From Podarcis gaigeae (taxonomy: Eukaryota), in the NCBI GenBank assembly GCA_964106915.2, contig OZ066915.1: a stretch of DNA of 64,000 nt, one strand, 5' to 3'. Positions 2,431 to 46,478 of this stretch are shown piece after piece. A program made the position numbers and the translations under genes. The stretch's first letter is position 1; each line of letters begins with the position of its first letter. The notes beneath the pieces were generated by a model. That model ran no database searches, was not told where the DNA came from, and saw nothing but the letters and a program-made list of their open reading frames with translations.

Positions 2431-5400
2431 GAATATGTCCATCATCCAAAATGCATGGCTGCAGATGCAGTGAATAGATGTAAGATGGAACACACAACCT
2501 GTGTTTTATAACCACTGGTTTTGTATACAAGGCCATGTTATGTTATAAATACAAAAAGCATCTTACGTAACCTCACAGTGAAGTGGGGTTGTGAGAGGGT
2601 AGATATAGTGTGCCATTGAATGAGCCATTGTGCTGAATTTTTTAGATTCACTTTGCTGACAAAAGAGCAGTAATTCTGCTGGAGTTTCTTCCAAAATGTA
2701 ATTCATCTTGAAAAGAGCTGCTTTCATTTTTCAGGGACTGTTACCGGAACATTGTGCCTATTTCATGACAACTGCCTGCAAATGCTTCACAAAAATATAC
2801 AGTAGTCTTGCAACTTATGCAGGGGCTACGTTCTGTGTATCGCACCTAAAGCCAAAATTGCATATAGTCAAAACCCATTGGGTTCAGCGGCAGGTGGGAT
2901 TGCCACTGTAATTTTTTCTGAAACCCAGGCCCCTTTCCACCTCCTTTTTAATGTTTTTGCCATGCATGTAAAGCTGAATGCGCATAATATGTGGACATAC
3001 TGTAGTGTGCTATGTTGTTTTACATAGTAATTTTAAGTAATTTGCTTGGCATATGATACTCATGGGTGTAGTGCCCATACTTAGATTCCCATAGGGCTTA
3101 ACAGAGCCTTGTTTCTACACACCCCCCCTTGCATGTACATCAGTATGCATGCAGGTCTCATTAAAAATCATCATAGAGAGTTTGTGAAATGCTGATCAGC
3201 AATAGCAGCAGTTATGGTGGGACAAAGTAATGGAACTACTCGACTAACATTGGCACCACTGCAATTTACCTGGATGAGGAAGGGCTGCACGGGATCAGGA
3301 TGGAAGTGCCAGAATCACTCAAATGATATGTCTGTGCAGCTGTGACCTCACCACCCTCCCGGCCCCGCTCCTGTCTAGGTAAGCTGCAGTGAGGTGGGTG
3401 TCAAGAGGGCAGTTTCTCAGCTCTACCCCAGCCAATGAGCCACTACTAATAGACAGTCTTAAACATTTTCCCCCTCAGACATCACATTGTGTTCAGAAGG
3501 ACTTACCCAAGGGTAAATATGCGTAGCTATTACAGCCTTAATGGAGTACAGTATTCACACAGAATCATTAAACTATATAGAGGAGAAAATAAAGTTGCTC
3601 CGGAAGATGAATCAGCATTATTCTACCTCAGAGTCCATTGTACTGAATGGAAAATCTTCCCACTTTAATAAACTTTGAATCAGGAAGTACATTTTTAATT
3701 ATCATTAAATGTTCTGGTGCCCTTTCAATTATATTATTCTATGTGGATGGCATTGTTTGTCAGTTGCGTAATGTGGAACGGCTGCTTCAGTTGCATGATA
3801 TCTTCATTTGCATAGACTTCATGTGTCTGTTTCAGCGAACAGACGAATCTGAGACTTGGGTCTGCCACTCTACTACTACAGGCCATTCAACTCCAAGGTA
3901 CTAGAGAGGCTGCAACTAAACATAGGATAGGGTACCATATCAATCATCCTACCTGTGTGGCCCTTAAATAGCATTTTGGAGCTTGAGCGAATATGGAGAG
4001 CCCTTAACACAACATTGTTAAAACCAAAAGATTTTTTGTCAGCTGAATTTGATTACATTTTGAGAAGGGTATGCAGACAACTCCCTCATCAGCCAAACTT
4101 GAAATTGAAAATAAGAAACGTAATGAAAAACGCAGGAGAAGAGATGAGAAGCAGGTTTGTTCCATTAGCCTTGCTGAAAGGCCAGCTCTGTCAAGCCTCC
4201 TCTATTTCAGTTGTCACCTAGTAGCAGCTATCCTAGCAGGCAGCCTCAGTGGGATAGATGAGAAGCAGGGCTGATTCCATCAGTTCTGCTGAAAGACCAG
4301 CTCCACCAGGCATCTCCTGCCCCTAAACTATTTCCAGCTCATTATTATACGAGTTCCTATTTAACACAAAGAACTGGCACCAGAGTTTGTCTTTCCCCCT
4401 CTTTCCTTCCTGACCCTTGTGTGTCATGTTTTGGGGGTCTTTAGTTGGTTTTGAAAAAGTTGTTACCCACAGTTAGCATTTCCACAACTATATACATACT
4501 CAATAATAGTTTCTGTTATCTTGCGACATATTGGACATAAAAGTTAAACCCTTGAATCTCAAAGTGGATTCTCAGAATTCTTAGTTGCTCATGATAATCA
4601 CGAACCAAATATTCGCATCTAGTTTTTGAATCCCTGGACATGCAAAATAGTCACAATTTAGAGTGATATTCAGGGGTCATGATATTATATGCAGTTGAAT
4701 CAATGAGAGTTATGCATAAATAATTACTGTGATTGAATCAACTGAACTGCTTGGGAAGATAGTTTAGATATATCTGTCAATTTATATTTTAAAAATAAAA
4801 GACTAGACAATATTGTGGGATCATATACCATGCATATTTTTATATGTCTTGTATTTCAATTTTTATATGCTATTGCCAGTTCTTCCCCCCTCCACCTCAT
4901 CAGACCCACCCATGAACTTTTATTTGCTGTTAATCCCACTTTATGATTTGGAAGTTACCCTTCTTAGCACCTGATGTCACAATGTTCCCAACACCCACTG
5001 TTGGTAGCTTGGCAACCCACCCACAAGAGGCTTGTGATTCATTCTCAGGTCCTGACATACCATTTGAGAACTGCTGACATAATTTCATGCATACAGCATT
5101 AAATGTGTACTTTATTGCCCTATTTGTCTGTAAAGGGCACATATTTCACTAGGATGATTCTACTCTTGGGCAGCTTTTAGCATGCCAAACTTTATGCAAC
5201 TAATTTGCTGCAGAGTTAGTCTTGGCAAATAGGTCAGTAATTGAATTGCTGTAGAACAGTAGTGTTGTAGAACACTGCTGTAGAAGTCCAGTGAAAACTG
5301 AAGTTCCTTCTTGAGAGAGAAGCCAGAGATTTTATCAATACAAAATGCATCACTGTTACCTTATCTGCCTGAAAAGGTCTACTCACCTAGGTTAATAACC

Positions 5401-6560: not shown

Positions 6561-6866
6561 AAGGTAAAGGTAAAGGGACCCCTGACCATTAAGTCTAGTC
6601 GCAGACGACTGGGGTTGCGGTGCTCATCTGGGTTTATTGGCTGAGGGAACCGGTGTACAGCTTCCAGGTCATGTGGCCAGCATGACTAAGCTGCTTCAGG
6701 CGAACCAGAGCAGCGCACAGAAACGCTGTTTACTTTCCCACCAGAGCGATACCTATTTATCTACTTGCACTTTGATGTGCTTTCGAACTGCTAGGTTGGC
6801 AGCTCACCCCATCGTGGGGATTCAAACAGCCGACTTTCTGATTGGCAAGCCATAGGCGCGTGTCTC
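6561..6866 (-). mobile_element. Sauria SINE with internal deletions
   Basis: (AAAGGT)n tail at left; the body is the reverse complement of the copy at 19473; TSD tttattaggaata at 6548-6560 and 6869-6881. Confidence 0.93.
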
Positions 6867-8222: not shown

Positions 8223-9860
8223 TGGGAAGTATATATAGCATATATTTGTGGTCAAATAATTGCATAAAAAAGTAAAGGTAAAGGACCCCTGACAGTTAAG
8301 TCCAGTCGTGAATGACTCTGGGGTTGAGGTGCTCATCTTGTTTTACTGGCCGAGGAAGCCGACGTTTGTCCAAAGACAGTTTTCCCAGGTCATGTGGCCA
8401 GCATGACTAAGCCGCTTCTGACGATACCAGAGCAGTGCACGGAAATGCCGTTTACCTTCCCGCCACAGTGGTACCTATTTATCTACTTGCACTTTGACGT
8501 GCTTTCAAACTGCTAGGTTGGCAGTAGTAGGGACCAAGCAGTGGGAGCTCACTCCGTGGCGGGGATTCGAACCGCTGACCTTCTGATCAGCAAGCCCTAG
8601 GCTCAGTGGTTTAGACCACAGCGTCACCTGCATCCCAATTGCATACTCATTATATAAAAATAAATTAAAGAATAAAAGAATAAAAGGGGGAAATGATGAG
8701 ATACTTTATAAAGGTATCTTATCCACAACATTTAACTAAGCTTATATCACAGTTATTCCCAAATCAGATAAGGATCACACAAAATGTGTGAATTGTCACC
8801 CTATATCCTTGATTAATGTTGATACAAAAAAATTAACATTGACACTAGCAAATAGAATCCAACAGGTAATTGTGGTGGTAATCGAGAGGGATCAGACCGG
8901 CTTTATAAAAACAAAACAGGCTGCAGATAACATTAGATTAGTGGCAAATTTAGTTGATTTAAATAAAAATAAAGATCAGTTTGTAATCATATCATTAGAT
9001 GCCGAAAAGGCCTTTGATAAAATCTATAAACAGTATATGTTGTTAGCTTTAATTAAATTTGGATTTCCCTTGGAGTTCATAAAATAGATCAAAATAATGA
9101 TCCACATCTAGAATCAAAGTGAATGGTATTATGTCTGTTTAGACATTTGTTTAGAGCCCCTGGCTAGTGCTATTAGACAACATTTAATAGCATCATGGAG
9201 CAGTTCACAATTCAGTTGAACGTAAGTTAGTTTTATTTATACTTTTGTTTATTTCAGAACCTCAGACTAGTATACCCATCTTGATGCAAATGATAGACGC
9301 TTTTGGTAAAATATCAGGTTATTCTGTTACTTGGTCCAAATCAGAATTGATGCCAATAGGTCAAAATTTGTTTACACACTCATTCAAGGAATATCAATTT
9401 GGGGTATGTTCTGAATCTATTAAATATCTAGGTATGTTAATACCAAGAGATATAACACAGCTACAGTTAATATGAATAAATTAATAAAAGAGGTTTCTTC
9501 AGATATCGATAGGTGGGAGTCATTGAACCTTACCCTTTGGTGAAGGGTGAATGCTCTGAAAATGAACTCTGTTCCCAGATTCATTTATATCCTGAGAGGA
9601 CTTCCGGTTTTTATATCTGGATCATATTTTCAAAAGATAAACTCATTGTTTAGGAAATGCCTTTGGGGCTCAGCATCACCAAGAATATCCTTGCAGAGAA
9701 CGAAACTACAAATTAAAGAAGGAGATTTCAGAATCCCAAATTTGGAATTATATCACTATTTAATATAAACATTAAAAAGAACTCATTTTGTCTCCAGATA
9801 TATTCCATTATATTCCATATATTCAATTATTTATTATTGAGAAGACGTTCTCACAAGGTA
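8223..9860 (+). mobile_element. Decayed L1/Tx1-clade LINE ORF2 (linker plus reverse transcriptase), interrupted by a SINE
   Basis: Translated motifs WEVYIAYICGQIIAY, AYITVIPK..KD, NCHPISLINVDTK, DQTGFI, IISLDAEKAFDKI, FGKISGYSVTWSKSELMP, IKYLG, RVNALKMNSVPRFIY, IPNLELYHY; stops and frameshifts present; end coordinate approximate. Confidence 0.92.
8267..8636 (-). mobile_element. Sauria SINE, full length, nested in L1
   Basis: AAAGGT tail; B-box reverse complement ggattcgaacc; TSD aattgcata at 8258-8266 and 8637-8645. Confidence 0.95.
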
Positions 9861-11022
9861 TTCAGTGTCCTTTTGTTATTTCAAAAAATCATATCCATAC
9901 CAAAAAATATCTTGAGGAACAACATTAAGTTTAGTGCTGCCCCAGAAATACATTTTTTTTAAAAATGGCCACATTTGAAGTTAAAAGATCAAACGTATTT
10001 TATGGTTCTTCAGAATATCTTTCCTAAATGTATATTATCCAATTAAACTGTGAAAGCCAATAAAACATGAAAATGTTTAGAACAGGTTTTTTTATCTGCA
10101 TATGCCCTTATTTGGGGTTTCTCATACTGTTCCCTGAGCAATATCCAGATGTGTGTAGGATATAAATGCAAAGATTTTCACACCTTCTGATTTCTCTACA
10201 GGGAACCATCTCTGTAAAGTTCCTCGGTTGAGCATTACTGAACTAAATATATTACATGTCAACATGATTCCACCCCCCCCCCCCATTTTGGTCTGTATTG
10301 GTCTGCGTTTGTGTGTAATTGCAGAATTCAAAGCTTAGTTTGAAATGAGGAACCTTAGTTTATTAAAATATATTCAGCATGCCAAATTACAATCCTGGTT
10401 TCATCTAGATTGTCTTGTAGACTTTAGCGAGAAGTGAAAAGGTGCAACCGAGGTCAGAATTCTTCCTCTGCATATTTAAATATGTGTTAATAATGACAAT
10501 AGTTTTATACTTTCATTTGGGTTTTTCCAAGTTCAGTAATGTCAGTCAACTATGAGCTAGATGGCTTCAGTCAACCAAGGCTTTTAGACGAACGAACAGG
10601 ACTTGATGTTTCATCATTTTATATGAAGACAGAGCCAATGCTAACTCACAAGCCACATACTGTGAAATAGTTGTGAAGTGTAGCCATAGTGCAACTACTA
10701 ATATAGCTCCAATATAAAGAAGGTTGTCACAAGTGACCTATTAAAATTAATGGGATTTCAGATATTTCCAGCTAACTTGTTCATTGATTCCAATAGGCCT
10801 AAATTTCCTCAGAAATTTCTACTCAGAAATAAGCCCCATTGAGTTAAATACTATTTCCAAGTAAGTGTATTGCAGCCTGAACTGGAAGTAGCTTGAATCC
10901 TGAATGCCTACCCACCAGTGGGGTAATCATGTGAGTAAAGTTCCATTCACAAGTAGCTCCTGCTGGCAGAGGAAATATGACCTTTATTGACTGCTCTTTC
11001 GTTGTGTCTGCATTCTATGGAA

Positions 11023-11911
11023 TGTTGTGGGGAAGCTTCAGAATGACCGCTCCCTGCATAAAACGGGGGGCGACCTTTGCGTGGACACACGCAGCCCCTG
11101 GATCTGGAGCGGCTCCATCAGCATAGGCTTGGCTCTGCCTTCCCTCAGGTGGGATACCTGGAGGTTTCTGCCTACCCCAGTCAATTGTCCAATCCCACCT
11201 GGGGGAAGCGTTGCCAAGGAGATCAGGCCAGGTAGGGGAGGGATTACCTGCCCACACAATAGAGGGAGGATCTTACCTGGGAATCCTCACTTGGCTCCAG
11301 AGCTTCTCCCACCCTACCCACTCACAGTTAATGCCTTATTTTGCAGGTTAACTTTTCTTCACAGGTTTTTCAGGTTAACTTTTCTTCACAGGTATGCGGG
11401 CGCTGCTACGTTAAGGTCACTGTCAAAGGGCCGGAAAGGAATTTCCCTGCATTGGCAGGTTTCGCCTTTCCCGTAGCAAAATGTCACAACTTTGGTGGTA
11501 TCAGGCCTTGGGCGAAATCCTTTTGTTCATCTTCCTCTTTGCAGCGGCGATAACAGGGTTCCCCGTTAAAGGGGTTTCTGAAGGGAGGCTTTGACCGTAT
11601 GCCAAAAGGTCATCATTGCTCTCTCCTGCGGCGGCGTCGTAACGGGGGCGGCTATCTCTGCTTGAACATATGTTCTCCAGAGACGGCCCATCCCCCACAC
11701 AAACACTGGATAACCCTGATGCTCCCTAGGTCCCCGGTTGGGGACTGGGGAGGGAGAACGCCCAATGCCTGAGCCAAGGTCTACCCACATTTGAAATTTA
11801 ATAAAGTTGTGGCCAATTTAATCCCATAGCATGTTGCCTTGAGTCGTTATTCCACATGATGGGGGGGGGGGAACCGCTCGGAATCTGGGGACTCCGCCTG
11901 TCCACGCAATA
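11023..11911 (+). mobile_element. GC/CpG-rich terminal-repeat-like element (DIRS/Ngaro-like repeat or solo LTR)
   Basis: Sharp compositional boundaries; AATAAAGTTGTGGCC at 11800; inverted repeat ttgcgtggaca (11077-11087) / tgtccacgcaa (11899-11909); no 4-6 bp TSD, only AAT at both junctions; no coding capacity. Confidence 0.6.
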
Positions 11912-12739
11912 GTGGTGTTTCCTCCCACAAGTAGGATTCTTCACTGGACTGCAAGTCTTGCATGAATGGAAGTTGCTGTTCTATTCATGGAATTGAGAGG
12001 AAGACAACATCTAAGTCACTTCCTTAGCTATATTTTTCCTAAGCCCCCTAAAATAATCTTTTACATTTATATTTTGGATAGAAGAAAAATGATTTGTAGT
12101 ATGGTGAAAAAAAGAAACTATGCTAATAAATACTCGGGAAGAGAGAGAGAGAGAGAAAGAGTGCCATTGGAAATTGGAACACTAAACACAATAGATCAAT
12201 GACAATTGGTCACTGTGAATATTTCAATGACAGAGAAGAAAGAAATCTGAGAAACAGAAGTGCTCTACGACTCCTTGCGAAATGGTGATAGGTAGACTTC
12301 AAAAGGTTCTGATATTCATTTCAAGTCTTCAAAGTCTGGTGTTTGATAATCACAAAAAAAGAGTGGTTATGTGAGAATTTTTGTTCTTCATGTGCCAGTA
12401 ATCTTAGAGAATGTTTTCATGTAAGAATTCAGCAGTGGCTTCCCCCACTCCACTTTACCTGAAAACTCTGTTTGAATTTCTGGTATAGATATTTCTCAGC
12501 CTACAGTTTATTGCCCTTTGTGATTACCTTAACCTGTTTATCTTATTTATTTCAAACATTTATAAGCTGTGCTCATATCTTTCTTGGATTCCAGAGAAGG
12601 GTACATAAACATTCAAATAACATTCCAAAATCAAAATTAACAATAAAAAACAACATTGAAAAGATCTGAGAAGTAATAAACTAAAAAGCTATTCAACCAC
12701 CTCAACCAATGCATTCTTTTTAAGAAATAAAAAACTGGG

Positions 12740-12905
12740 CAAATAAACAAGAAGAGGATGCAGTGTGGGTGCCTGTTGCACTTCCTTTAGGATGGGTGTT
12801 AGAAAGCCGGGGTTCTATCACTGAGGAGGCCTTCTCCTTTACAGCTGCATTATACACATCCCCTGCAGTTGGAACCTGGAGAAGGCCTCATCTGAAGACC
12901 ATATT
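12740..12905 (-). mobile_element. L2 LINE 3' fragment (highly decayed)
   Basis: 'ggggttctatcactgaggaggccttctcc' resembles the reverse complement of the L2 RAFSV..P.LWN coding region also seen at 21490-21630. Confidence 0.45.
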
Positions 12906-12984
12906 GCATCCGCCTCCTCCTCCTCATTACTCACCCTTCACCCTAGAAGGTACATCTCTTCTTATACCAAAGCTACCCATGTGT

Positions 12985-13150
12985 TAAAATTATTGGCTGA
13001 TGTCCTGTTTCAACTACCAACCCTGTCAGAGGTGAGAACACGAGGAAAGGTTTTTTCAGCTGTTGTGCCCCAACTGTGTCATGCCATTCATAGGAAGGTT
13101 TGCTTGGAGCTGTTTTTGTTATCTGTTAGGCACCAGAGATACTTCTTAAA
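12985..13150 (+). mobile_element. L2 LINE 3' fragment
   Basis: Translation EVRTRGKVFSAVVPQLCHAI resembles the L2 C-terminal RAFSVVAPRLWNAL. Confidence 0.5.
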
Positions 13151-13307
13151 AACAAAGCAAAAAAACCCAAGCATTTTGAATCTCCCAATAAATTTCAAAC
13201 TGAATTTTAATCCACCATTGTCATGCTGAATGTTATTCTATTGTTTTTCTTGTACTTTTGCAACATACATACATGTACTTTTAGCCTTTTAATTTATTAA
13301 GTCTAAT

Positions 13308-13335
13308 ACACACACACACACATACACACACACAC
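13308..13335. repeat. (AC)n microsatellite
   Basis: Read directly, one interruption. Confidence 0.9.
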
Positions 13336-13344
13336 TGTACTTTC

Positions 13345-14131
13345 ATGTTCTGGTCAGATGCTGCTTCCCACAGAGAAGGCGATTCAGAAGGTCAGGACCA
13401 TGGATAGCTCTGAATGAGCAGTTTGCTCCAACAGAAGTTGCAAGCAATCTGAGGCCTTGTAAACCACTGCCTCTAGACTATCTCTTATTGGAGACTTCCG
13501 GCATTGCCGCCATGGTGAACAGTGGATCCCATGATAGTGGATGCCAGCCGTGCAGTTAATTGAGGATAATCTGGGAGTAATTATCCTGACAAGCACCCCC
13601 CCCGGGTCGAAGGGGGGGGGAGAGCTTTCACTCGCAGGAGTCATGGCTGGACGCTGGAATACTTTCGGTTTTGGAAAGGCAAAATGGAGAAGTTGTGGCG
13701 TAATGAGAATTGAGTCCTTGAAGGAGGGGCAATGTTGAAGAGGATTGATTGATTATAACATGAAGGAAAGGATGAATGTAAACAAATATTTCACACAGAA
13801 AACTACAGGATATAAATTCCTATTGCAAGTTAATGTATATGTCTTTGTTAAATACGAACAAAAGTCATCACACCAGTGGCTGCTAAAATAAAGGATTAAG
13901 ATCGGAATTGTTGTATTTGGAATAATTAAGGGAATTGGAGCAGGACCAAGGAATAACATCAACTCCTGATAACTGGAAAACGGGAAGTCATCCAAAAATG
14001 TTGAATTCGGAACTGATTAATTGGCTCTTTTGATTGTATTATGATTTGGGATGATTAGGTATTGTATTAATGTGGCCTCCATTGGACTGTTATTAATGAA
14101 AATCTAATAAAAGTTACTTAAAAAAATAAAA
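13345..14131 (+). mobile_element. Unclassified poly(A)-tailed retroposed insert, possibly a non-autonomous L1 derivative
   Basis: AATAAA at 14106-14111 followed by an A-tract at 14120-14131; gggaagtc and a T-rich L1-like 3' UTR; CpG-richer 5' half; degenerate candidate TSD acacactgtacttt / acagactgttcctt. Confidence 0.45.
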
Positions 14132-16449: not shown

Positions 16450-16820
16450 GTAAAAGGTAAAGAACCCCCAGATGGTTAAGTCCAGTCAAAGGTGGCTATG
16501 GGGTATGGAGCTCATCTCGCTTTTCAGGCCAAGGAAGCCACAGACAGCTTTCTGGGTCATGTGGCCAGCATAACTAAACTGCTTCTGGTGTAATAGAACA
16601 TGACAGAAGCCAGAGCATACAGAAATGCCATTACCATCCTGCCTCATCGGTACCTATTTATCTACTTGCACTGGTATGTTTTTGATCTGCTAGGTTGGCA
16701 GAAGCTGGGACAGAGCAACAGGAGCTCACCCCATCACGTGGATTCGAACTAACAACCTTCCGATCAACAAGTCCAAGAGGCTCAGTGGTATAGACCACAG
16801 CGCCACCCCACCCGCATCCC
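16450..16820 (-). mobile_element. Sauria SINE, variant subfamily
   Basis: Tail and body homologous to the other copies, with diagnostic 'gtccagtcaaagg' and 'caagaggctcagtgg'; TSD agcatctcatg at 16439-16449 and 16822-16832. Confidence 0.93.
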
Positions 16821-19472: not shown

Positions 19473-19827
19473 GGGACACGGGTGGCGCTGTGGGTTAAAC
19501 CACAGAGCCTAGGACTTGCCGATCAAAAGGTCAGCAGTTCAAAAATCTGTGACGGTGTGAGCTCCCGTTGCTCAGTCCCTGCTCCTGCCAACCTAGCAGT
19601 TCGAAAGCACATCAAAGTGCAAGTAGATACATAGGTACCGCTCCAGCGGGAAGGTAAATGGCATTTCTGTGCTCTGCTCTGGTTCGCCAGAAGTGGCTTA
19701 GTCATGCTGGCTACATGACCCAGAAGCTGTACGCCGGCTCCCTCGGCCAATAAAGCGAGATGAGCACCGCAACTCCAGAGTCGGTCACGACTGGACCTTA
19801 TGGTCAGGGGTCCCTTTACCTTTACCT
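19473..19827 (+). mobile_element. Sauria SINE, full length
   Basis: tRNA-like head (A box tggcgctgtgg), BovB-like tail gagtcggtcacgactgg, (ACCTTT)n end; perfect 14 bp TSD tactgtggtataac at 19459-19472 and 19828-19841. Confidence 0.96.
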
Positions 19828-22570: not shown

Positions 22571-23716
22571 TTAATTTGGCCCATGGCTTTTACTGGAAGA
22601 TGCACAGCGGACAAGCAGAAATTCATTTGCCATATAAATTGTGAGTTGACTTTTGGCATCTAAGAATAAAACAATATTGTGCCCTTTATCACATTGAATA
22701 ATTGGACTGCTGCAATGTCATCTTCTTTCCTTTACTGGTGTGATGAATTTGTGCCAGAGTGCTGGCCAGGAATAGCAACCCTATATATGCTAGTCATTGA
22801 CCTCTTTCTGTGAAGATTGTAGACAGTAAACAGCTTTTCCTGGATGACAGGATAAGGATTGCTAGGATTGGGGAGGGGCAAGGGGAAGGCCAAGGTTTTA
22901 AGGCCAGCCGTGATCTTTTAATCTTCTTCACTGGTTCACTTTAAGTTCAGTCAGCCATTGGAAACTCCACATGAGACTGTCAGGGTAATTAATAGACTTA
23001 TTTAGTGAAATTCCTTGATGTACTTTCCATTGGCCCATTTAGGTAGGAAGACACAACACCGAATCACACCATTTCCATTAGCAGCTAGAGGCAGTAATAT
23101 TATAACAAAAAATATTACACTAGGTTATGCTTTATTTATATGCCATCTTTTGTCCCAAAGGCCCCCAAAGGGATGAAAGGCTTATTAATACAAAATAAAT
23201 ATGCACTAAATGCACAATAAACAAAACAATCAAAACAATATAAATGAGTAAAGTCATAAAATAGCCAGTAACCATGCAGCTTTGTATTAGGAATGCCAGT
23301 TAATCCTTTGGAAAACAGACAAACAAAACAACAACAACCTACAAATCAAGCCACACTTATTTCTTACCTCCCTCCTGTTGGTCACTGGCAGGGACAGGTT
23401 CCACCAACAGGTTCTTACCCTGGGACAGAAACAATTTTTCTCTCCCACTGCAGCCAACCATTTGTGGAAGTGCATGCCTTCTGAGAAAATAATATACTAA
23501 GGAAAGTTAGGTTGTTGTAGATAAAGGGAATTTATTGGGTTTCTTTGATATGTTGATTCCATGACTAGATTCCAGCTAAAGTGGACCAAGGTGGGAGAAG
23601 CAGCAAGTCCTCAGAGGGAAGCCAGGAGATGGACGATTGTTCAGCTAGGCACTCTCAGTTCACAAAAGAGTTTAGAAAGAAGGAGAAAAATAAAAACAGG
23701 TTTTCAGAATAAGAGC

Positions 23717-23864
23717 CAGTGCTTTGTTTCTAAAAAAAAGTGTTTTGGGGCACTCTCATTTTCCTGCTCATATTGAAATACTGCCCCTCAGTGAGGCCAA
23801 ACTTAGATTCACAAAATGTTTAGGGGTATGCGTCCCCCTGCGTCCCCCCAGAAAAAAAGCACTG
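23717..23864. mobile_element. hAT MITE, 148 bp
   Basis: TIRs cagtgctttgtttct / agaaaaaaagcactg; perfect 8 bp TSD ataagagc at 23709-23716 and 23865-23872. Confidence 0.93.
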
Positions 23865-25156
23865 ATAAGAGCTATAAATAGCAAGCAATGAGAACAAAGG
23901 ATAACAGAAAGGAATTAAAAATTGATTCTTCATGAAAGACAAGAGGAAAATGTTAACATGTCACCCTCTGCTCCAACCTGGTGCCCTTTAGATGTGGTTC
24001 AACAACAATTCAGAGAGCCCTAGCTGATCAGGCCTCTGTGAAAGGTCAACCAGGTCGATACAATTAGTTTTAGTCAGTTTTTGCTATAAAAAAATGGTGG
24101 CATTCTCAATGTTTTTCTTATGCAGGTCATTTTTGGGATGTAAGAAGCAAGAGGCAATAATCCTGCCAGCTTAATTCATGCTTGTCTTCTTCATTTCCAA
24201 GACTGGAATGCAGAACCAAATAAACTTTACTAGGCTATTATTCAGACTGAGACTGAAGGGATAATTCATTTTATCTTGCCAATTTGTCTGTAATAGTTTT
24301 TAAAAGGAGAAAAAAAATTCAACTAAAAAGCAGTATTAGGTGCCTGGCAAAGAAAACACTATTTTGCTCAAAGGCAATTCTAAACCAGAGAATTAGTTTT
24401 CTGCATAATCAGATCACAATAGTTGAAAGCATTGTTCTCCTCCTCATTACATTTCACAAATTATGATGCCAAGGACACATGCTCCTGAGTCATTTCAGGG
24501 GAGTTCCAGTGGCTGAGATCCAACAAAACATGGTGGTGTGGAAGCAGATCACACTCAAGGTTGTAGGTTTCCTACAAATTTCTACTGTGGCTGTTCTTCA
24601 GTGTTGAAGAGACAAGCTGCATTGCAAAATGCGAAGTAGTATACTTCAACAATGTGAAATGCTGTTTGTAATTATCTATGCATGGGTATAGCTTTGTTGG
24701 CTTCTAGAAATTACCAATCATAAGGCTGCATATTTAAATTCTAACCATCTTCCACACAGTGGAGGAATGCAAACTTGTGTGTATTTATTGTTCACTATGG
24801 GTAGTGGTGGTTTTTTTTTGAAAACTCAGCAAATTTTTGTTTTCCAACATTTTCAGTCAGTGGATAGAAACTTAGAATGTTATTTTGGATTTAACAAAAC
24901 AAAAACTGGGAGCATATTTACCAAATGTTACTGGTAAATGGTTGGCAGTAGGTCATTAAGGTAAACTGATGCCGCTAAACAAGAACCTCCAAGAATTGTG
25001 TGATATCCCCAAAATTAGGGGCATACTTCTGGTCTGTGTTTTATGTGTTCTAGTCTAGGTTTTATATAAAGCTCAAGGGCCCTGGAGACCAGACTGAAGT
25101 AGTTGAAGTAAAAGACTTCTGGTGAGCATTTTCTCATGTCTAATATGTTTTTGAGA

Positions 25157-34865: not shown

Positions 34866-35206
34866 GGGACGCGGGTGGCACTGTGGGTTAAACCACAGAG
34901 CCTAGGACTTGCTGATCAGAAGGTTGGCGGTTCGAATCCCCGCAACTTGGTCCCTGCTCCTGCCAACCTAGCAGTTCAAAAAGCACGTCAGTGTGCAAGT
35001 AGACAAATAGGTACCGCTCTGGTGGGAAGGTAAACGGCATTTCGTTGCGCTCCTCTGGTTCGCCAGAAGCAGCTTAGTCATGCTGGTCACATGACCCAGA
35101 AGCTGTACGCCAGCTCCCTCTGACAATAAAGCAAGATGAGCGCTGCAACCCCAGAGTCGGCCACGACTGGACCTAATGGTCCGGGGTTCCTTTACCCTTT
35201 ACCTTT
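34866..35206 (+). mobile_element. Sauria SINE
   Basis: A box and intact B box ggttcgaatcc (34929-34939); ACCTTT tail; TSD atgttgctctta at 34852-34863 and 35208-35219. Confidence 0.95.
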
Positions 35207-43075: not shown

Positions 43076-43242
43076 AAGGTAAAGGTAAAGGGACCCCTGA
43101 CCATTAGGTCCAGTCGTGACCGACTCTGGGGTTGCGGCGCTCATCTCGCTTTACTGGCCAGCATGACTAAGCCGCTTCTGGTGAACCAGAACAGCGCACA
43201 GAAATGCCATTTACCTTCCCGCCTATTTATCTACTTGCACTT
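43076..43242 (-). mobile_element. Sauria SINE, 5'-truncated, with two internal deletions
   Basis: The tail half is near-identical to the copy at 19473; the tRNA-derived head is missing. Confidence 0.92.
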
Positions 43243-43994
43243 CAGGTATTTTTTAATTTGTATTCCACCCTATATCGTAGATCTCAGGGGGGTTCACAAC
43301 ACTGTGATTCTGGACTCATTCACATGTAGTAAAATAGTATGGTTTAGTACTGCATGAATAAACCTGAAAAAGCCTGAGTGAAGTGTCCTGATTTAGTGTT
43401 AATGTTTGAAGCAGAGATGCTAGATTAAAACAAACTATGGTAAGTTTCACGGCAAGCCACCATCAAACCACTGATGATGAAGTTGGCTTGTTAAAGTAGT
43501 AATTCCCTGTTTGAAACCAGGATCTTTTGTTGAAATGTGACCTTGAGCTGGGGAAGTCCTCCTTTGCGTTCCTTGCCTTCTTCACCACCTAGAGCAGGGG
43601 TCTGCAACCTTTAAGACAAAAAGAGCCACTTGGACCCGTTTCCAAAAAAACAACAACAACTGGGAGCCGCAAAAACATTGCAACATTTAAAACAAATATA
43701 ACACTGTATTTATTGTTTCTTGCCTTAACGCTGTATATACAGGATCGTGCAGTCAGCTGTCAATCTCAAGAAAAAAGGACAAATAGCTAATTAAAATATT
43801 TAATTTACAACCAGTAAATTAAATACCACTTCAAAACAGTGACCAGTGTATATGGCCCCTTTCAATGCAGCCTGCTTACAAAGGCGGGAAAGACCAGCAA
43901 TAAGCTGTTGCATAACGTTCCCCAAGGAAAGTGTTAGCTATTCACCAAACTTCCCCCTGCTTAGTTTAAAAAGGGCCTTCAGGCAACTAACTCC

Positions 43995-44270
43995 CACGTG
44001 GAATTTCCTATAGTAAGATGGCGGCCGCCTCAGAAGACCACATGGGCAGATAAGATGGCTGCTGGGATGATCCGGTTACCCAGCAACAGCACAGCTGTTT
44101 CCGACGCTTTTGAAAGCAGCCGGCAAAGCAAGCGTTGGAGCGCCGAAGCCACCTAACCCCCACAACTAGAATGCTGCGCATGTGACCAAATGGCGAGGAC
44201 TTACTTTGCTAGAGACAAGCCCCGACACTACCACAAGCCTCCCTCTCTTCGCACCGCCCAGCCTCCCAAG
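43995..44270. promoter_or_regulatory. CpG-rich promoter/first-exon-like segment inside the hAT element
   Basis: E-box cacgtg 43995; YY1 aagatggcggc 44015-44025 and aagatggctgc 44052; RFX X-box gttacccagcaac 44075-44087; NRF1-like tgcgcatgtg 44175; minus-strand donor AAA|GTAAGT at 44204. Confidence 0.5.
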
Positions 44271-44671
44271 AAAAAAAACCCACCTCAAACAGTCACAAAG
44301 CACAAATTCCACGCGACCGCAACTTGCTATGCCCAATAATCAATGCCCCAAAATGCCATAGAAAATTAATCAGGGCCCCAGTGTACCATAAATCATAATC
44401 AGTGGCTGATGTAAATAATAATTAATAATGAGGCATTCGTCATTATAAAAATACCTTTTTATTATTCATTTGTTTGACCCCTCAGAATTACTCCTCCTCA
44501 TAGAAATAAAATTAACAAGTTACCTTTTTTTGAGTGTGTGTTCTTCACTCCCCTTCAAAACAGTGACCAGTGTATACGGCCCCTTTCAATGCAGCCTGCT
44601 TTCCCCAAGGAAAGAACAATTCACCAAACTTCCCCCTGCTTAAGTTTAAAAAGGGGCTTCAGGCAACTAAC

Positions 44672-45128
44672 TCCTCCGCCTCCTCCCCTCGCCTCCTCCC
44701 CTCGCCTCGCCTCCTCCCCTCGCCTCCTCCCCTCGCCTCGCCTCCTCCCCTCGCCTCCACTCCTCGCCTCCTCCCCTCGCCTCCACCCCTCGCCTCCTCC
44801 CCTCGCCTCCACTCCTCGCCTCCTCCCCTCACCTCCTCCCCTCGCCTCCTCCCCTCGCCTCCACTCCTCGCCTCCTCCCCTCGCCTCCACTCCTCGCCTC
44901 CTCCCCTCGCCTCCTCCCCTCGCCTCCACTCCTCGCCTCCTCCCCTCGCCTCCTCCCCTCGCCTCCACTCCTCGCCTCCTCCCCTCGCCTCCTCCCCTCG
45001 CCTCCACTCCTCGCCTCCTCCCCTCGCCTCCTCCCCTCGCCTCCTCCCCTCGCCTCCGCCCCTCGCTTCCTCCCCTCGCCTCCTCCCCTCGCCTCCGCTC
45101 CTCGCCTCCTCCCATCGCCTCCTCCCCG
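44672..45128. repeat. 13-mer VNTR (cctcgcctcctcc / cctcgcctccact), about 35 units
   Basis: Read directly; it produces the five overlapping low-complexity ORFs between 44538 and 45364. Confidence 0.95.
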
Positions 45129-45666
45129 GAGCCGCAGCAAAGGCTTTAAAGAGCCACATGCGGCTCTGGAGCCGCAGGTTGCCGACCCCCGACCTAGAGG
45201 CAGCTGCTGATATAAGCAAACTCCCCACTCAGCTGATGCCTCAACACCTGAGCTGCATGAAAACATACCACATAGATGATAGCTGTAGAATTTCTGTACT
45301 GTTCTGTATAGATATTGGGATAACTGTAGTGAACATATCTACTTTTCTGTGGGGCCCATCTTAGCATCTGTATACAAGAATCCTTTCTCTAACTCTGACT
45401 AGCCTAGACTTGCCTGATCTATGGTGATATCACTATAGAGTGGTAAATAATAATAATAAAAAAGCAAGAGTGCTAGTTCACTGAGCAGAGAAATTGCTTC
45501 TGACAGCTGGAATATGCATTAAACCCGAGGCATTTCCACCAAATAATACTGTGATATTGATGTTGTAAGTACTGATGGAGAATGCAGTATGATGATGAAC
45601 TGCTTCATGTTGCCTTAGGCTTAACTCATAAAAATACTAAATTTAATTATCTTAAGTGTGACCTCA

Positions 45667-45675
45667 ACACACACA

Positions 45676-45712
<37 letters not shown>
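45667..45712. repeat. Compound (AC)n(AG)n microsatellite
   Basis: Read directly. Confidence 0.96.
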
Positions 45713-46082
45713 TTTGTACATCTGTATATGTTAAAACCTCATCTCTCGCTCCCCAAACCACAACAGCTAGTATAGGGTTGCCATATTTCAAAAAGTGAAA
45801 ATCCAAACACAAAAGTTGTTGATCTTTAGTTTTGCCCAAAATATACACTTCCAACATGGGCTGCCATAATGTCCAGGCTCCATGGGGTACTAGTGCTGCC
45901 AGTGACAGCTCACTTGGACTCAGACGGGGAATGTATTAAATTGAACCAGCTTACTGTGGATAGATGTTCCTCCAGAAGCTGCCTCCATGGAAGTGATCTG
46001 TAGAGGACCAAATGGGTGCTATAGCTGTAAGCTGGCCTTTGACCATAAGCTGGCTCCATGGATGGACATCCTAGCCCTAGGG

Positions 46083-46212
46083 CAGTGGTGGCCAAACTCG
46101 GCCTTCTATCTGTTTTAGGACTACAATTCCCATCATCCGTGACCACTGGTCCTGTTAGCTAGGGATGATGGTAGTCCCAAAACAGCTGGAGGGCCAAGTT
46201 TGGTCACCACTG
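46083..46212. mobile_element. hAT palindromic MITE, 130 bp
   Basis: TIR cagtggtggccaaact / agtttggtcaccactg; perfect TSD ccctaggg at 46075-46082 and 46213-46220. Confidence 0.93.
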
Positions 46213-46478
46213 CCCTAGGGCATTCAGTTCCCCTGTCTAAATATTTTCTTCCTCTGAATGATTAACATCTGTAAAGAGCAATAGAAGATATACTGTCTCA
46301 AGACTTGCAGAGCAACAGAAAATCACATACAAACTCACAGGGAACTCTTTCATAAAATTTTGATATTATCTATACTGGGATGATAAAGTATAGGACTATG
46401 TTCTGCCTTCTGCTTTGTTAAGAATAATGATAAGGTATTTAATGTTTAACAAAGTTAAAATATAATGGTTTTCCCCAC

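What the first reader, a model, noticed from the sequence alone, without database searches (positions are those of the whole stretch)
43595..45191. Pack-type hAT transposon carrying a promoter/first-exon-like cassette
Seen: 16 bp TIRs and a perfect 8 bp TSD bound 1597 bp with no transposase. The interior holds a CpG-rich block (about 43880-44330) with E2F-like ggcgggaa (43883), an E-box, NF-kB-like ggaatttcc, three YY1-type motifs (44015, 44052, 44188), an RFX X-box, an NRF1-like site, a GC box and a consensus minus-strand donor AAA|GTAAGT (44204). Established: YY1/NRF1/RFX clusters typify vertebrate CpG-island promoters, and Pack-type DNA transposons capture host fragments, best known in plants. 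Inference: a young hAT family captured a host promoter plus first exon and disperses it as a mobile regulatory module.
Basis: partly seen in the sequence, partly recalled or inferred. Interest (0 to 1): 0.78.

Follow-up and report, generated by a model that had tools for sequence, protein, structure and literature searches.

The report
Young non-autonomous hAT transposon, cargo unproven
This is a real, recently inserted cut-and-paste (hAT) transposon without its own transposase in a wall-lizard genome. Its GC-rich, promoter-looking middle is carried by roughly a hundred sister copies, but nothing shows it was stolen from a host gene, and it holds no recognisable first exon.

Summary
Window 43595-45191 is a 1,597-bp element with 14/16 terminal inverted repeats (TIRs) and a perfect 8-bp target-site duplication (TSD), ACCTAGAG, and it has no transposase. 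It is mobile: contigs of the source species cross both junctions. A contig of a related species joins the two flanks, breaking exactly at 45192, so the site is empty there.

The termini belong to a very abundant miniature-element family. The GC-rich block sits at roughly 60-240 times single-copy depth in the source species and about 100 times in a close relative. It is about 20 times (partial) in a third species and about 1 time in a fourth, where transposon sequence flanks it.

- a 125-170-bp internal duplication;
- a 451-bp minisatellite of 13-bp units;
- the position of the block, about 300 bp (44005-44304), at the centre of an internal palindrome that a common variant keeps intact.

"First exon" is not supported. 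No ATG frame reaches a donor, such donors occur at 0.66 per kb here, and protein searches found nothing real. The block's CpG level equals that of SINE copies in the same window. No donor locus could be searched for with these tools.

The scan noted other Pack-hAT candidates elsewhere in this genome. Those notes are unchecked, and none resembles this block.

The parts
43587..43594 (.). Left copy of the 8-bp target-site duplication, ACCTAGAG
   Evidence: It fits the NYYTARRN target consensus reported for Charlie/HT-type hAT families of Anolis (PMC3014272).
43595..43610 (+). Left terminal inverted repeat, CAGGGGTCTGCAACCT
   Evidence: Contig depth jumps from about 60 to about 270,000 at this boundary in run X1.
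43611..43825 (+). Left subterminal region, A-rich, with GAGCCRC motifs at 43623 and 43664
   Evidence: 6 of the 14 window matches to GAGCCRC lie within 75 nt of the two ends; 43535-43708 is at the depth of the termini.
43826..43994 (+). R1, the upstream copy of an internal direct duplication. It carries 40 extra bases (43878-43917), which include the E2F-like GGCGGGAA.
   Evidence: alignment with R2.
43995..44006 (.). Left half of the internal palindrome, CACGTGGAATTT
   Evidence: (pair I22). table 5c: variant copies read ...AACTCC-ACGTGG-AATTCCACGCG... with no block between.
44005..44304 (+). GC-rich 'promoter-like' module of about 300 bp. GC is 0.54 and CpG observed/expected is 0.66. It holds two AAGATGGC (YY1-type) sites 37 nt apart near its left end, an RFX-type site, a GCGCATG half-site and a GC box, and its right end is A-rich.
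   Evidence: Depth: X1 8,500-14,000 against flank 59-75; X4 350-500 against flank 0-16; X8 0-1,160 against flank 50; X7 8.5 against flank 8-14.
44304..44315 (.). Right half of the internal palindrome, AAATTCCACGCG
44316..44549 (+). AT-rich core. From about 44405 onward it stands at roughly the depth of the termini (X1 170,000-318,000 against 268,000-387,000), which suggests most copies of the family hold it.
   Evidence: table 2: X1 depth 170,000-318,000 for 44405-44578.
44550..44674 (+). R2, the downstream copy of the internal duplication
44677..45127 (+). Minisatellite, (CGCCTCCTCCCCT) about 35 times, 86% matches
   Evidence: It is far deeper in the source species than in relatives: X1 78,000-465,000 against X7 5-42 and X8 0-366.
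45128..45175 (-). Right subterminal region with four GAGCCRC motifs and a short hairpin (45153-45166 / 45169-45182)
   Evidence: (pair I8). Weak Rfam match to the mir-9209 precursor: 30 bits against a gathering score of 90.
45176..45191 (-). Right terminal inverted repeat (reverse complement CGGGGGTCGGCAACCT)
45192..45199 (.). Right copy of the target-site duplication, ACCTAGAG
   Evidence: Run X8 contig record 25 starts to match exactly at 45192 and continues into the left flank.

Best explanation
Window 43595-45191 is a young non-autonomous hAT transposon of the Charlie/HT-like kind. It has a CAG... TIR, an 8-bp TSD on an NYYTARRN target, and clustered GAGCCRC subterminal motifs.

It has no transposase. 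It must have been cut out and pasted here by the transposase of an autonomous relative that recognises its ends. This happened in the lineage of the source species, after the split from at least one related lizard.

Its interior is a patchwork:
- a duplicated native segment (R1 and R2);
- a core that stands at about the same depth as the family's termini;
- a minisatellite that expanded in this species;
- a GC-rich module of about 300 bp at the centre of an internal palindrome.

That module is a subfamily trait, present in roughly 60-240 copies here. It is not private to this copy.

My preferred reading is inference. The module came down from a longer, low-copy progenitor hAT, and it may be that element's own promoter or leader. 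A non-autonomous derivative that kept it then amplified in this species and its close relative. On this reading the module is not a freshly captured host promoter plus first exon.

Shown: the ends, the mobility, the multi-copy state, the internal anatomy and the absence of a coding first exon.

Inferred: mobilisation in trans, the origin of the module, and any promoter activity.
For: TIR and TSD:
- establish them; 0 of 30 shuffles give such a structure.
- The TSD fits NYYTARRN. The TIR matches the Anolis hAT-HT2 and hAT-HT1 TIRs at 13/16 by my own count against the TIR strings printed in PMC3014272.
- GAGCCRC motifs cluster at both ends.

Mobility:
- X1 records 1 and 8 cross both junctions with no differences.
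- X8 record 25, a 1,104-nt contig, joins 45192-45658 to 43287-43468 with only 89 letters between, so the site is empty there.

Copy state:
- Termini stand at 1e5-4e5 against flanks of 8-75.
- The block stands at 8,500-14,000 in X1. Unitigs identical to this copy stand at 4,062 and 5,277.
- Many different internal joints are listed (skips of 105, 434, 616, 715, 776 and 861 bases). That is expected for deletion derivatives of a longer element.

In X7 the block lies on one 387-nt contig at depth 8.5, close to single copy. It reaches into R on the left and to 44351 on the right, both multi-copy transposon sequence there. No further contig adds depth.

No coding exon.

The block's CpG level equals that of SINEs in this window.

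PMC3014272 describes lizard hAT families whose members share ends but have unique interiors, including incorporated foreign DNA.
Against: - The block is bracketed by the two halves of a palindrome with an AAT(T) overlap. A common variant has the intact palindrome ACGTGGAATTCCACG in its place, at X1 4,538, X4 463 and X8 181. That looks more like an insertion into the palindrome than a deletion, so the block may be a later acquisition.
- No autonomous partner was seen, so descent from one is untested.
- Earlier unchecked notes of this scan report several hAT elements in this genome that carry host first exons. This raises the prior for capture.
- Depth from contigs is only a rough proxy for copy number. 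The tool warns that holes prove nothing.
Confidence: 0.5

Rival explanations
1. Pack-type capture. During gap repair or template switching, a member of this hAT family copied about 300 bp of host GC-rich promoter-proximal DNA into a break at its internal palindrome. The chimera then amplified by transposition and spread a promoter-like module.
For: - The block lies exactly at the centre of a palindrome that variant copies keep intact, with 3-4 bases of overlap.
- A duplicated native segment (R1) sits directly upstream, as template switching would give.
- The block has GC 0.54 and CpG observed/expected 0.66-0.77.
- Two AAGATGGC sites lie 11 and 48 nt from the left edge of the block, in one orientation.
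- PMC8277862 reports that multi-copy Pack-TIRs exist in frogs and alligators and tend to capture GC-rich DNA.
- Earlier unchecked notes report similar elements with identifiable host exons in this genome.
Against: - No parental copy was found or could be looked for, and that is the defining criterion in PMC8277862.
- In X7 the only contig with the block is embedded in transposon sequence at single-copy depth, with no extra donor depth. In X8 part of the block has no contig at all.
- There is no coding exon.
- The CpG level is no higher than in SINE copies here.
- The motif enrichment test is circular.
Confidence: 0.27
2. Nested insertion of another repeat. The 300-bp block would be a separate mobile or retroposed sequence, such as a short retrocopy with an A-rich 3' end or a solo LTR-like unit. 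It landed in the palindrome of one hAT copy with a 3-4-bp duplication, AAT(T), and was then carried along.
For: - The right end of the block is A-rich (AAGAAAAAAAACCCACCTCAAACAGTCACAAAGCACAAA, 44265-44303), and AAT(T) is present at both junctions.
- The right part of the block is deeper than its core: X1 41,582 for 44231-44317 against 8,500-14,000.
Against: - The block has no TIRs, no polyadenylation signal, no tRNA-like part and no Rfam family.
- The A run is not terminal.
- A separate repeat family should be multi-copy outside hAT copies, yet in X7 the block is at single-copy depth.
Confidence: 0.13
3. The TIR/TSD structure is a chance look-alike and the region is ordinary non-mobile DNA.
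For: The 16-mer search alone is weak: 9 of 100 shuffles give two or more matches at up to 3 mismatches.
Against: - The combined TSD-plus-TIR structure occurs in 0 of 30 shuffles.
- Contig depth steps up several-thousand-fold exactly at the two ends, and a relative has the empty site.
Confidence: 0.01

Closest known systems
Non-autonomous Charlie/HT-type hAT families of the lizard Anolis carolinensis (e.g. hAT-HT2N1-3_AC, hAT-N4_AC; Novick et al. 2010, PMC3014272)
   Same: - 16-bp TIRs that start CAGGGGTC... or end ...CAACCT
- an 8-bp TSD on NYYTARRN/NTCTAGAN targets
- sizes of 0.3-1.5 kb
- young copies
- families that share ends but have unrelated or 'orphan' interiors, and incorporation of foreign DNA into hAT (hobo_AC) elements
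   Different: - The TIR here matches the published Anolis TIRs at only 13/16, and the host is a lacertid.
- The interior has a palindrome-centred GC-rich module and a 13-bp minisatellite.
- No consensus library was available to test family identity.
Multi-copy Pack-TIR elements of animals (e.g. Pack-hAT-N8_XT of Xenopus tropicalis; Tan et al. 2021, PMC8277862)
   Same: - TIR transposon sequence on both sides of an internal segment unlike the rest
- a TSD
- several to many copies
- a GC-rich internal segment
   Different: - Pack-TIRs are defined by an identified parental copy that is free of TIR elements. None is known here.
- The apparent copy number, about 1e2, would exceed the handful per family reported there.
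Pack-MULEs of plants
   Same: The idea is the same: a non-autonomous TIR element carries and spreads host-derived, GC-rich, 5'-biased gene fragments.
   Different: - The superfamily differs (Mutator, 9-bp TSD, long TIRs).
- Gene fragments in Pack-MULEs are identified by homology to parental genes, and that was not achieved here.
Rfam RF03991 (mir-9209 precursor family). From my own memory, not checked, this is one of the transposon-derived miRNA hairpins.
   Same: The right 73 nt of the element (TIR plus subterminal hairpin) align along the whole model. The model's 5' arm reads like a hAT TIR (CAGUGGUCGGCAAACCGCGGCUC).
   Different: The score is 30 bits against a gathering score of 90, so it is not a member. 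The likeness is that of related transposon ends.

Membership tests
hAT superfamily (as a non-autonomous member) | 8-bp target-site duplication | tested here: met
   ACCTAGAG on both sides, perfect.
hAT superfamily (as a non-autonomous member) | Short TIRs (about 10-25 bp) that begin with CAG/TAG | tested here: met
   16 bp, 14/16 complementary, CAGGGG... on the left and CGGGGG... on the right. It matches the Anolis hAT TIRs in PMC3014272 at 13/16.
hAT superfamily (as a non-autonomous member) | Target preference of Charlie/HT-type hATs (NYYTARRN) | tested here: met
   A-C-C-T-A-G-A-G fits every position of the consensus printed in PMC3014272.
hAT superfamily (as a non-autonomous member) | Mobility: the orthologous site is empty in a relative | tested here: met
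   Run X8 contig record 25 joins 45192-45658 to 43287-43468. Run X1 contigs cross both filled junctions. The contig sequence itself was not shown, only its coordinates.
hAT superfamily (as a non-autonomous member) | An autonomous partner with the same ends that encodes a hAT transposase | not testable with these tools
   There is no transposase in the element or elsewhere in the window. No vertebrate genome collection was searchable.
Pack-TIR / Pack-hAT (Tan et al. 2021 criteria) | TIR-transposon sequence on both sides of the internal segment, with a TSD | tested here: met
Pack-TIR / Pack-hAT (Tan et al. 2021 criteria) | The internal segment is non-transposon DNA | tested here: inconclusive
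   The block is multi-copy and always seen in transposon context. No repeat library was available, and Rfam, tRNA and Pfam searches were blank.
Pack-TIR / Pack-hAT (Tan et al. 2021 criteria) | A unique parental copy elsewhere, not flanked by TIR elements | not testable with these tools
   There is none in the window and none in metagenome contigs. In run X7 the total depth over the block equals that of one transposon-embedded contig, which speaks weakly against a donor there.
Pack-TIR / Pack-hAT (Tan et al. 2021 criteria) | Copies generated by transposition (multi-copy, each with its own TSD) | tested here: inconclusive
   Multi-copy depth is seen in X1, X4 and X8. Individual copies and their TSDs could not be seen.
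Vertebrate CpG-island promoter | At least 200 bp with GC of at least 0.5 and CpG observed/expected of at least 0.6 | tested here: met
   43995-44330 has GC 0.54 and observed/expected 0.77. SINE copies in the window reach 0.59-0.69 too, so the criterion does not discriminate here.
Vertebrate CpG-island promoter | Transcription starts there (CAGE, RNA, open chromatin) | not tested
Runs guessed to be RNA held only 0.10-0.21 of the words.
Captured first exon | An ATG-started frame that stays open up to a consensus splice donor | tested here: not met
   no ATG frame in 43700-44700 reaches a donor of at least 7/9 inside the block. The donor at 44204 (minus strand) has no ATG-open frame upstream. Such donors occur at 0.66 per kb in the window.
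Captured first exon | The encoded peptide matches the N-terminus of a host protein | tested here: not met
   - The plus-strand 52-aa frame was run against 1.84 billion proteins. It gave only two hits, both summed chance matches (32% identity, about 20 bits) to one repeat unit of giant repetitive proteins.
- The minus-strand 57-aa frame had no word-search candidate.
- Pfam was blank for six frames.
- The other frames were not run through the large search.

The most novel reading that the evidence does not exclude
A recently active hAT subfamily in wall lizards picked up a host promoter-proximal CpG-island fragment with YY1, RFX, NRF1-half and E2F-type sites. It inserted at a fragile internal palindrome. 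The subfamily has since spread it to about a hundred or more near-identical copies. That would make it one of several high-copy Pack-hAT families in this genome that scatter ready-made promoter modules.
Probability: 0.22. Interest if true: 0.7.

Novelty: new member of a known kind. Interest (0 to 1): 0.33.

Why it matters
As it stands, this is a well-documented example of very recent cut-and-paste transposon activity in a lacertid lizard. The site is filled in one species and empty in a relative, and there are tens of identical sister copies. Recent DNA-transposon activity is uncommon in amniotes.

If the GC-rich module proves to be host-derived, it would add a high-copy vertebrate case of promoter capture and dispersal. 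That kind is well known in plants, and only a handful of multi-copy families are reported in animals (PMC8277862).

If the module is the transposon's own promoter, it is ordinary.

Tried and rejected
- Other copies or a donor inside the window: blastn of the element against the 64 kb found only self-matches. The TIR search found only the two ends.
- Known RNA families, tRNA or SINE heads: nothing at gathering level. There was only a sub-threshold mir-9209 likeness at the right end.
- Coding content:
  - Pfam was blank.
  - The word search of the 57-aa minus frame was blank. It sees only proteins of 0.55-1.75 times that length, so it says nothing about full-length host proteins.
  - The full HMMER search of the 52-aa plus frame gave two hits, at E 2.6e-25 and 8.2e-18. 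I reject both as artefacts. Each is a 32%-identity, roughly 20-bit match repeated dozens of times in a repetitive 1,849-aa or 3,295-aa protein.
- Motif enrichment against dinucleotide shuffles: 8 against 0.6. I reject this as evidence because the patterns were chosen from this sequence. No independent motif library was on hand.
- Self-folding of the block: folding 43985-44325 as single-stranded DNA gave z = -0.55, nothing beyond the 10-bp stem.
- The bacterial promoter and terminator scan is irrelevant for a vertebrate.
- A metagenome scan with a 32-mer of the block gave 0 hits.
- Earlier-findings look-ups by sequence for the block and both ends were blank.
- A paper search for mir-9209 gave 0 papers.
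- I considered the short palindrome variant as a hAT excision footprint and rejected it. Both palindrome halves are also present around the block in the long form.
Full report
**1. What is there**

The sequence shows the left TIR CAGGGGTCTGCAACCT at 43595-43610. The right end at 45176-45191 has the reverse complement CGGGGGTCGGCAACCT. The two match at 14 of 16 positions. Both ends abut a perfect 8-bp direct repeat, ACCTAGAG, at 43587-43594 and 45192-45199.

I scanned the window for a perfect 8-mer repeat that brackets a 16-nt inverted repeat of at least 14/16. The scan finds this element and two small miniature elements. It finds nothing in 30 composition-matched shuffles.

The TSD fits every position of NYYTARRN, the target consensus given for Charlie/HT-type hAT families of Anolis. 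The TIR matches hAT-HT2_AC (CAGGGGTCCCCAAACT) and hAT-HT1_AC (CAGTGATGGSSAACCT) at 13/16 (PMC3014272).

The heptamer GAGCCRC occurs 14 times in the window. Six of those lie within 75 nt of the element's two ends. That is the kind of subterminal repeat hAT transposases bind; this last point is established knowledge, not tested here.

The right 73 nt align end to end with Rfam mir-9209, but at only 30 bits against a gathering score of 90. The model's 5' arm reads like a hAT TIR. I take this as a likeness between transposon ends, not as a miRNA gene.

No ORF exceeds 60 aa except low-complexity frames through a minisatellite, and Pfam is blank. The element is therefore non-autonomous.

**2. It is mobile, young and multi-copy**

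One call laid Logan contigs of four public runs from four coded organisms on 43100-45700.

- In X1 (organism A), contigs with no differences cross both junctions (records 1 and 8). This is most likely the source species.
- In X8 (organism E), a single 1,104-nt contig (record 25) matches 45192-45658 and then 43287-43468, with 89 letters between. Its match begins exactly at the first base after the element. The 1.6-kb element is therefore absent at the orthologous site.
- In X7 the contigs stop near the site on both sides, so that run is uninformative on this point.

Summed contig depth is only a rough proxy for copy number, as the tool warns. With that caveat:

| Region | X1 (A) | X4 (B) | X7 (D) | X8 (E) |
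|---|---|---|---|---|
| Unique flanks | 59-75 | 0-16 | 8-14 | 50 |
| Termini | 1e5-4e5 across the four runs | | | |
| Block, 43970-44230 | 8,500-14,000 | 350-500 | 8.5 | 0-1,160 |

The termini therefore belong to an old and very abundant miniature-element family that all four species share.

In X1, unitigs identical to this copy over 90-110 nt stand at 4,062 and 5,277 (records 4 and 5). The block-bearing subfamily thus has on the order of 1e2 near-identical copies in the source species and in its close relative. More distant relatives have few copies or one.

**3.

- A native segment is duplicated as R1 (43826-43994) and R2 (44550-44674). The boundaries are identical, and R1 carries 40 extra bases that include the 'E2F' string. 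The first half of R lies in bins that are strongly multi-copy in X1 (69,000 for R1's bin, 318,000 for R2's), so it is native transposon sequence.
- A 13-bp minisatellite, CGCCTCCTCCCCT repeated about 35 times, fills 44677-45127. It supplies 37 of the element's 69 CpGs. It is far deeper in X1 than in the other runs.
- The GC-rich block is bracketed by CACGTGGAATTT (43995-44006) and AAATTCCACGCG (44304-44315). These are the two halves of a palindrome.
- Contigs in three runs read R-end + ACGTGG + AATTCCACGCG..., at depths 4,538 (X1), 463 (X4) and 181 (X8) (table 5c). A common variant therefore has the intact palindrome ACGTGGAATTCCACG and lacks about 44005-44304.
- The two forms differ by a 300-bp indel at the palindrome centre, with an AAT(T) overlap.

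I read this as an insertion into a pre-existing palindrome. A deletion would have to recreate a perfect palindrome by accident. This reading is inference.

Several other internal joints are listed, skipping 105, 434, 616, 715, 776 and 861 bases. They show the usual swarm of deletion derivatives.

**4. Is the block a captured promoter plus first exon?**

Four points weaken the reading.

(a) The shuffle test of the motifs (8 against 0.6) is circular, because the patterns were read off this sequence. The 'NRF1' site is only a half-site, and the canonical NF-kB pattern is not met.

(b) Copies of the Sauria-type SINE in this same window have CpG observed/expected of 0.59-0.69. CpG richness here marks young repeats as much as host islands.

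(c) No ATG-started frame in the block reaches a donor. The minus-strand AAA|GTAAGT at 44204 has no ATG-open frame upstream. On that strand the 'promoter' motifs would lie downstream of it, in the would-be intron. Donor-like sites of this quality occur at 0.66 per kb in the window.

(d) Protein evidence is negative.
- Pfam is blank for six frames.
- The word search is blank for the 57-aa minus frame. That search is limited to proteins of similar length.
- A full HMMER search of the 52-aa plus frame against 1.84 billion proteins returned two hits.
- Pairwise comparison shows these are a 32%-identity, roughly 20-bit chance match summed over dozens of repeat units in giant repetitive proteins.

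The first-exon part is therefore not supported.

**5. Where did the block come from?**

No vertebrate DNA collection could be searched, so the decisive donor test could not be run.

The indirect evidence points both ways. The palindrome-centred position, the duplicated R1 just upstream and the GC-richness fit template-switch capture as described for Pack-TIRs (PMC8277862). Earlier unchecked notes of this scan report other hAT elements in this genome that carry identifiable host first exons: ATP1B3, PKD2 and ENTREP1.

Against capture, in X7 the whole block lies on one 387-nt contig at single-copy depth. That contig runs into multi-copy transposon sequence on both sides, and no second contig adds depth. 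A conserved host donor should have given one. In X8 part of the block has no contig at all. The tool warns that such holes prove nothing.

A pattern of one or a few copies in transposon context in distant relatives, and about 1e2 in the source lineage, is what a rare long progenitor element would give if one non-autonomous derivative later amplified. An autonomous DNA transposon needs a promoter a few hundred bases inside its left end, and that is where this block lies (410-710 bases from the left end). One unchecked first-reader note says another autonomous hAT-type element of this genome has a CpG island with E2F and NRF1 motifs upstream of its transposase (s1-701498). By sequence look-up it is not the same DNA.

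My weights are:

| Reading | Weight |
|---|---|
| Native or progenitor-derived module inside an ordinary young non-autonomous hAT | about 0.5 |
| Host capture | about 0.27 |
| Nested foreign repeat or retrocopy | about 0.13 |
| Other, including chance | remainder |

**6. How it works**

Mobilisation in trans by a hAT transposase that binds the TIRs and the GAGCCRC-rich subterminal regions is inferred from family knowledge. So are excision and reinsertion with an 8-bp staggered cut at an NYYTARRN site. The TSD and the empty site are shown.

The interior has been built by successive repair and replication errors: duplication of R, the 300-bp gain at the palindrome, and minisatellite growth. No evidence bears on whether the block drives transcription.

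**7. Comparison and novelty**

The element is the same kind of thing as the non-autonomous hAT families of Anolis, which share ends but have unique interiors (PMC3014272). It meets the structural half of the Pack-TIR definition but not the defining half, a parental copy (PMC8277862).

I file it as a new member of a known kind. It is of modest interest as a clear case of very recent hAT activity in a lacertid, and the capture reading remains open.

**Limits**

- Both read tools were used once each, as capped.
- The window has no N.

Noticed in passing
window 43078-43245: A fragment of a Sauria-type SINE; I recognise the family from memory. It has an internal deletion and lies 350 bp upstream of the hAT insertion. 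It is the most abundant sequence laid, with summed contig depth of about 2e7 in X1 and X8 and loose ends that fill in the deleted part. Other copies in the window lie at 6563-6772, 8272-8494, 16453-16672, 19615-19826 and 34993-35203, at 68-88% identity.
   Followed up: partly
window 46075-46220: A second, tiny hAT-type miniature element of about 130 bp at 46083-46212. Its TIRs are CAGTGGTGGCCAAACT / CAGTGGTGACCAAACT (15/16) and its TSD is the perfect 8-bp CCCTAGGG, which also fits NYYTARRN. The TIR resembles hAT-HT1_AC of Anolis.
   Followed up: no
window 23709-23872: A miniature element-like structure of about 148 bp at 23717-23864. Its TIRs are CAGTGCTTTGTTTCTA / CAGTGCTTTTTTTCTG (14/16) and its TSD is the perfect 8-bp ATAAGAGC.
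   Followed up: no
window 44677-45127: The 13-bp minisatellite inside the element, CGCCTCCTCCCCT (G-rich on the minus strand), is hugely over-represented in the source species. Depth is 78,000-465,000 in X1, against 5-42 in X7 and 0-366 in X8. This suggests a species-specific expansion of this array across copies, or as a satellite.
   Followed up: partly
window 44405-44578: This AT-rich internal stretch is about as deep as the termini (X1 170,000-318,000), although it lies 800 bp from either end of this copy. It is probably the core of the common short miniature-element form of the family.
   Followed up: partly
proteins P0001 and P0002 (HMMER search hits): Whole-sequence E-values of 1e-25 and 1e-18 arose from one weak 41-residue chance match repeated dozens of times in giant repetitive proteins. 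This is a trap when short queries are run against the large library.
   Followed up: yes
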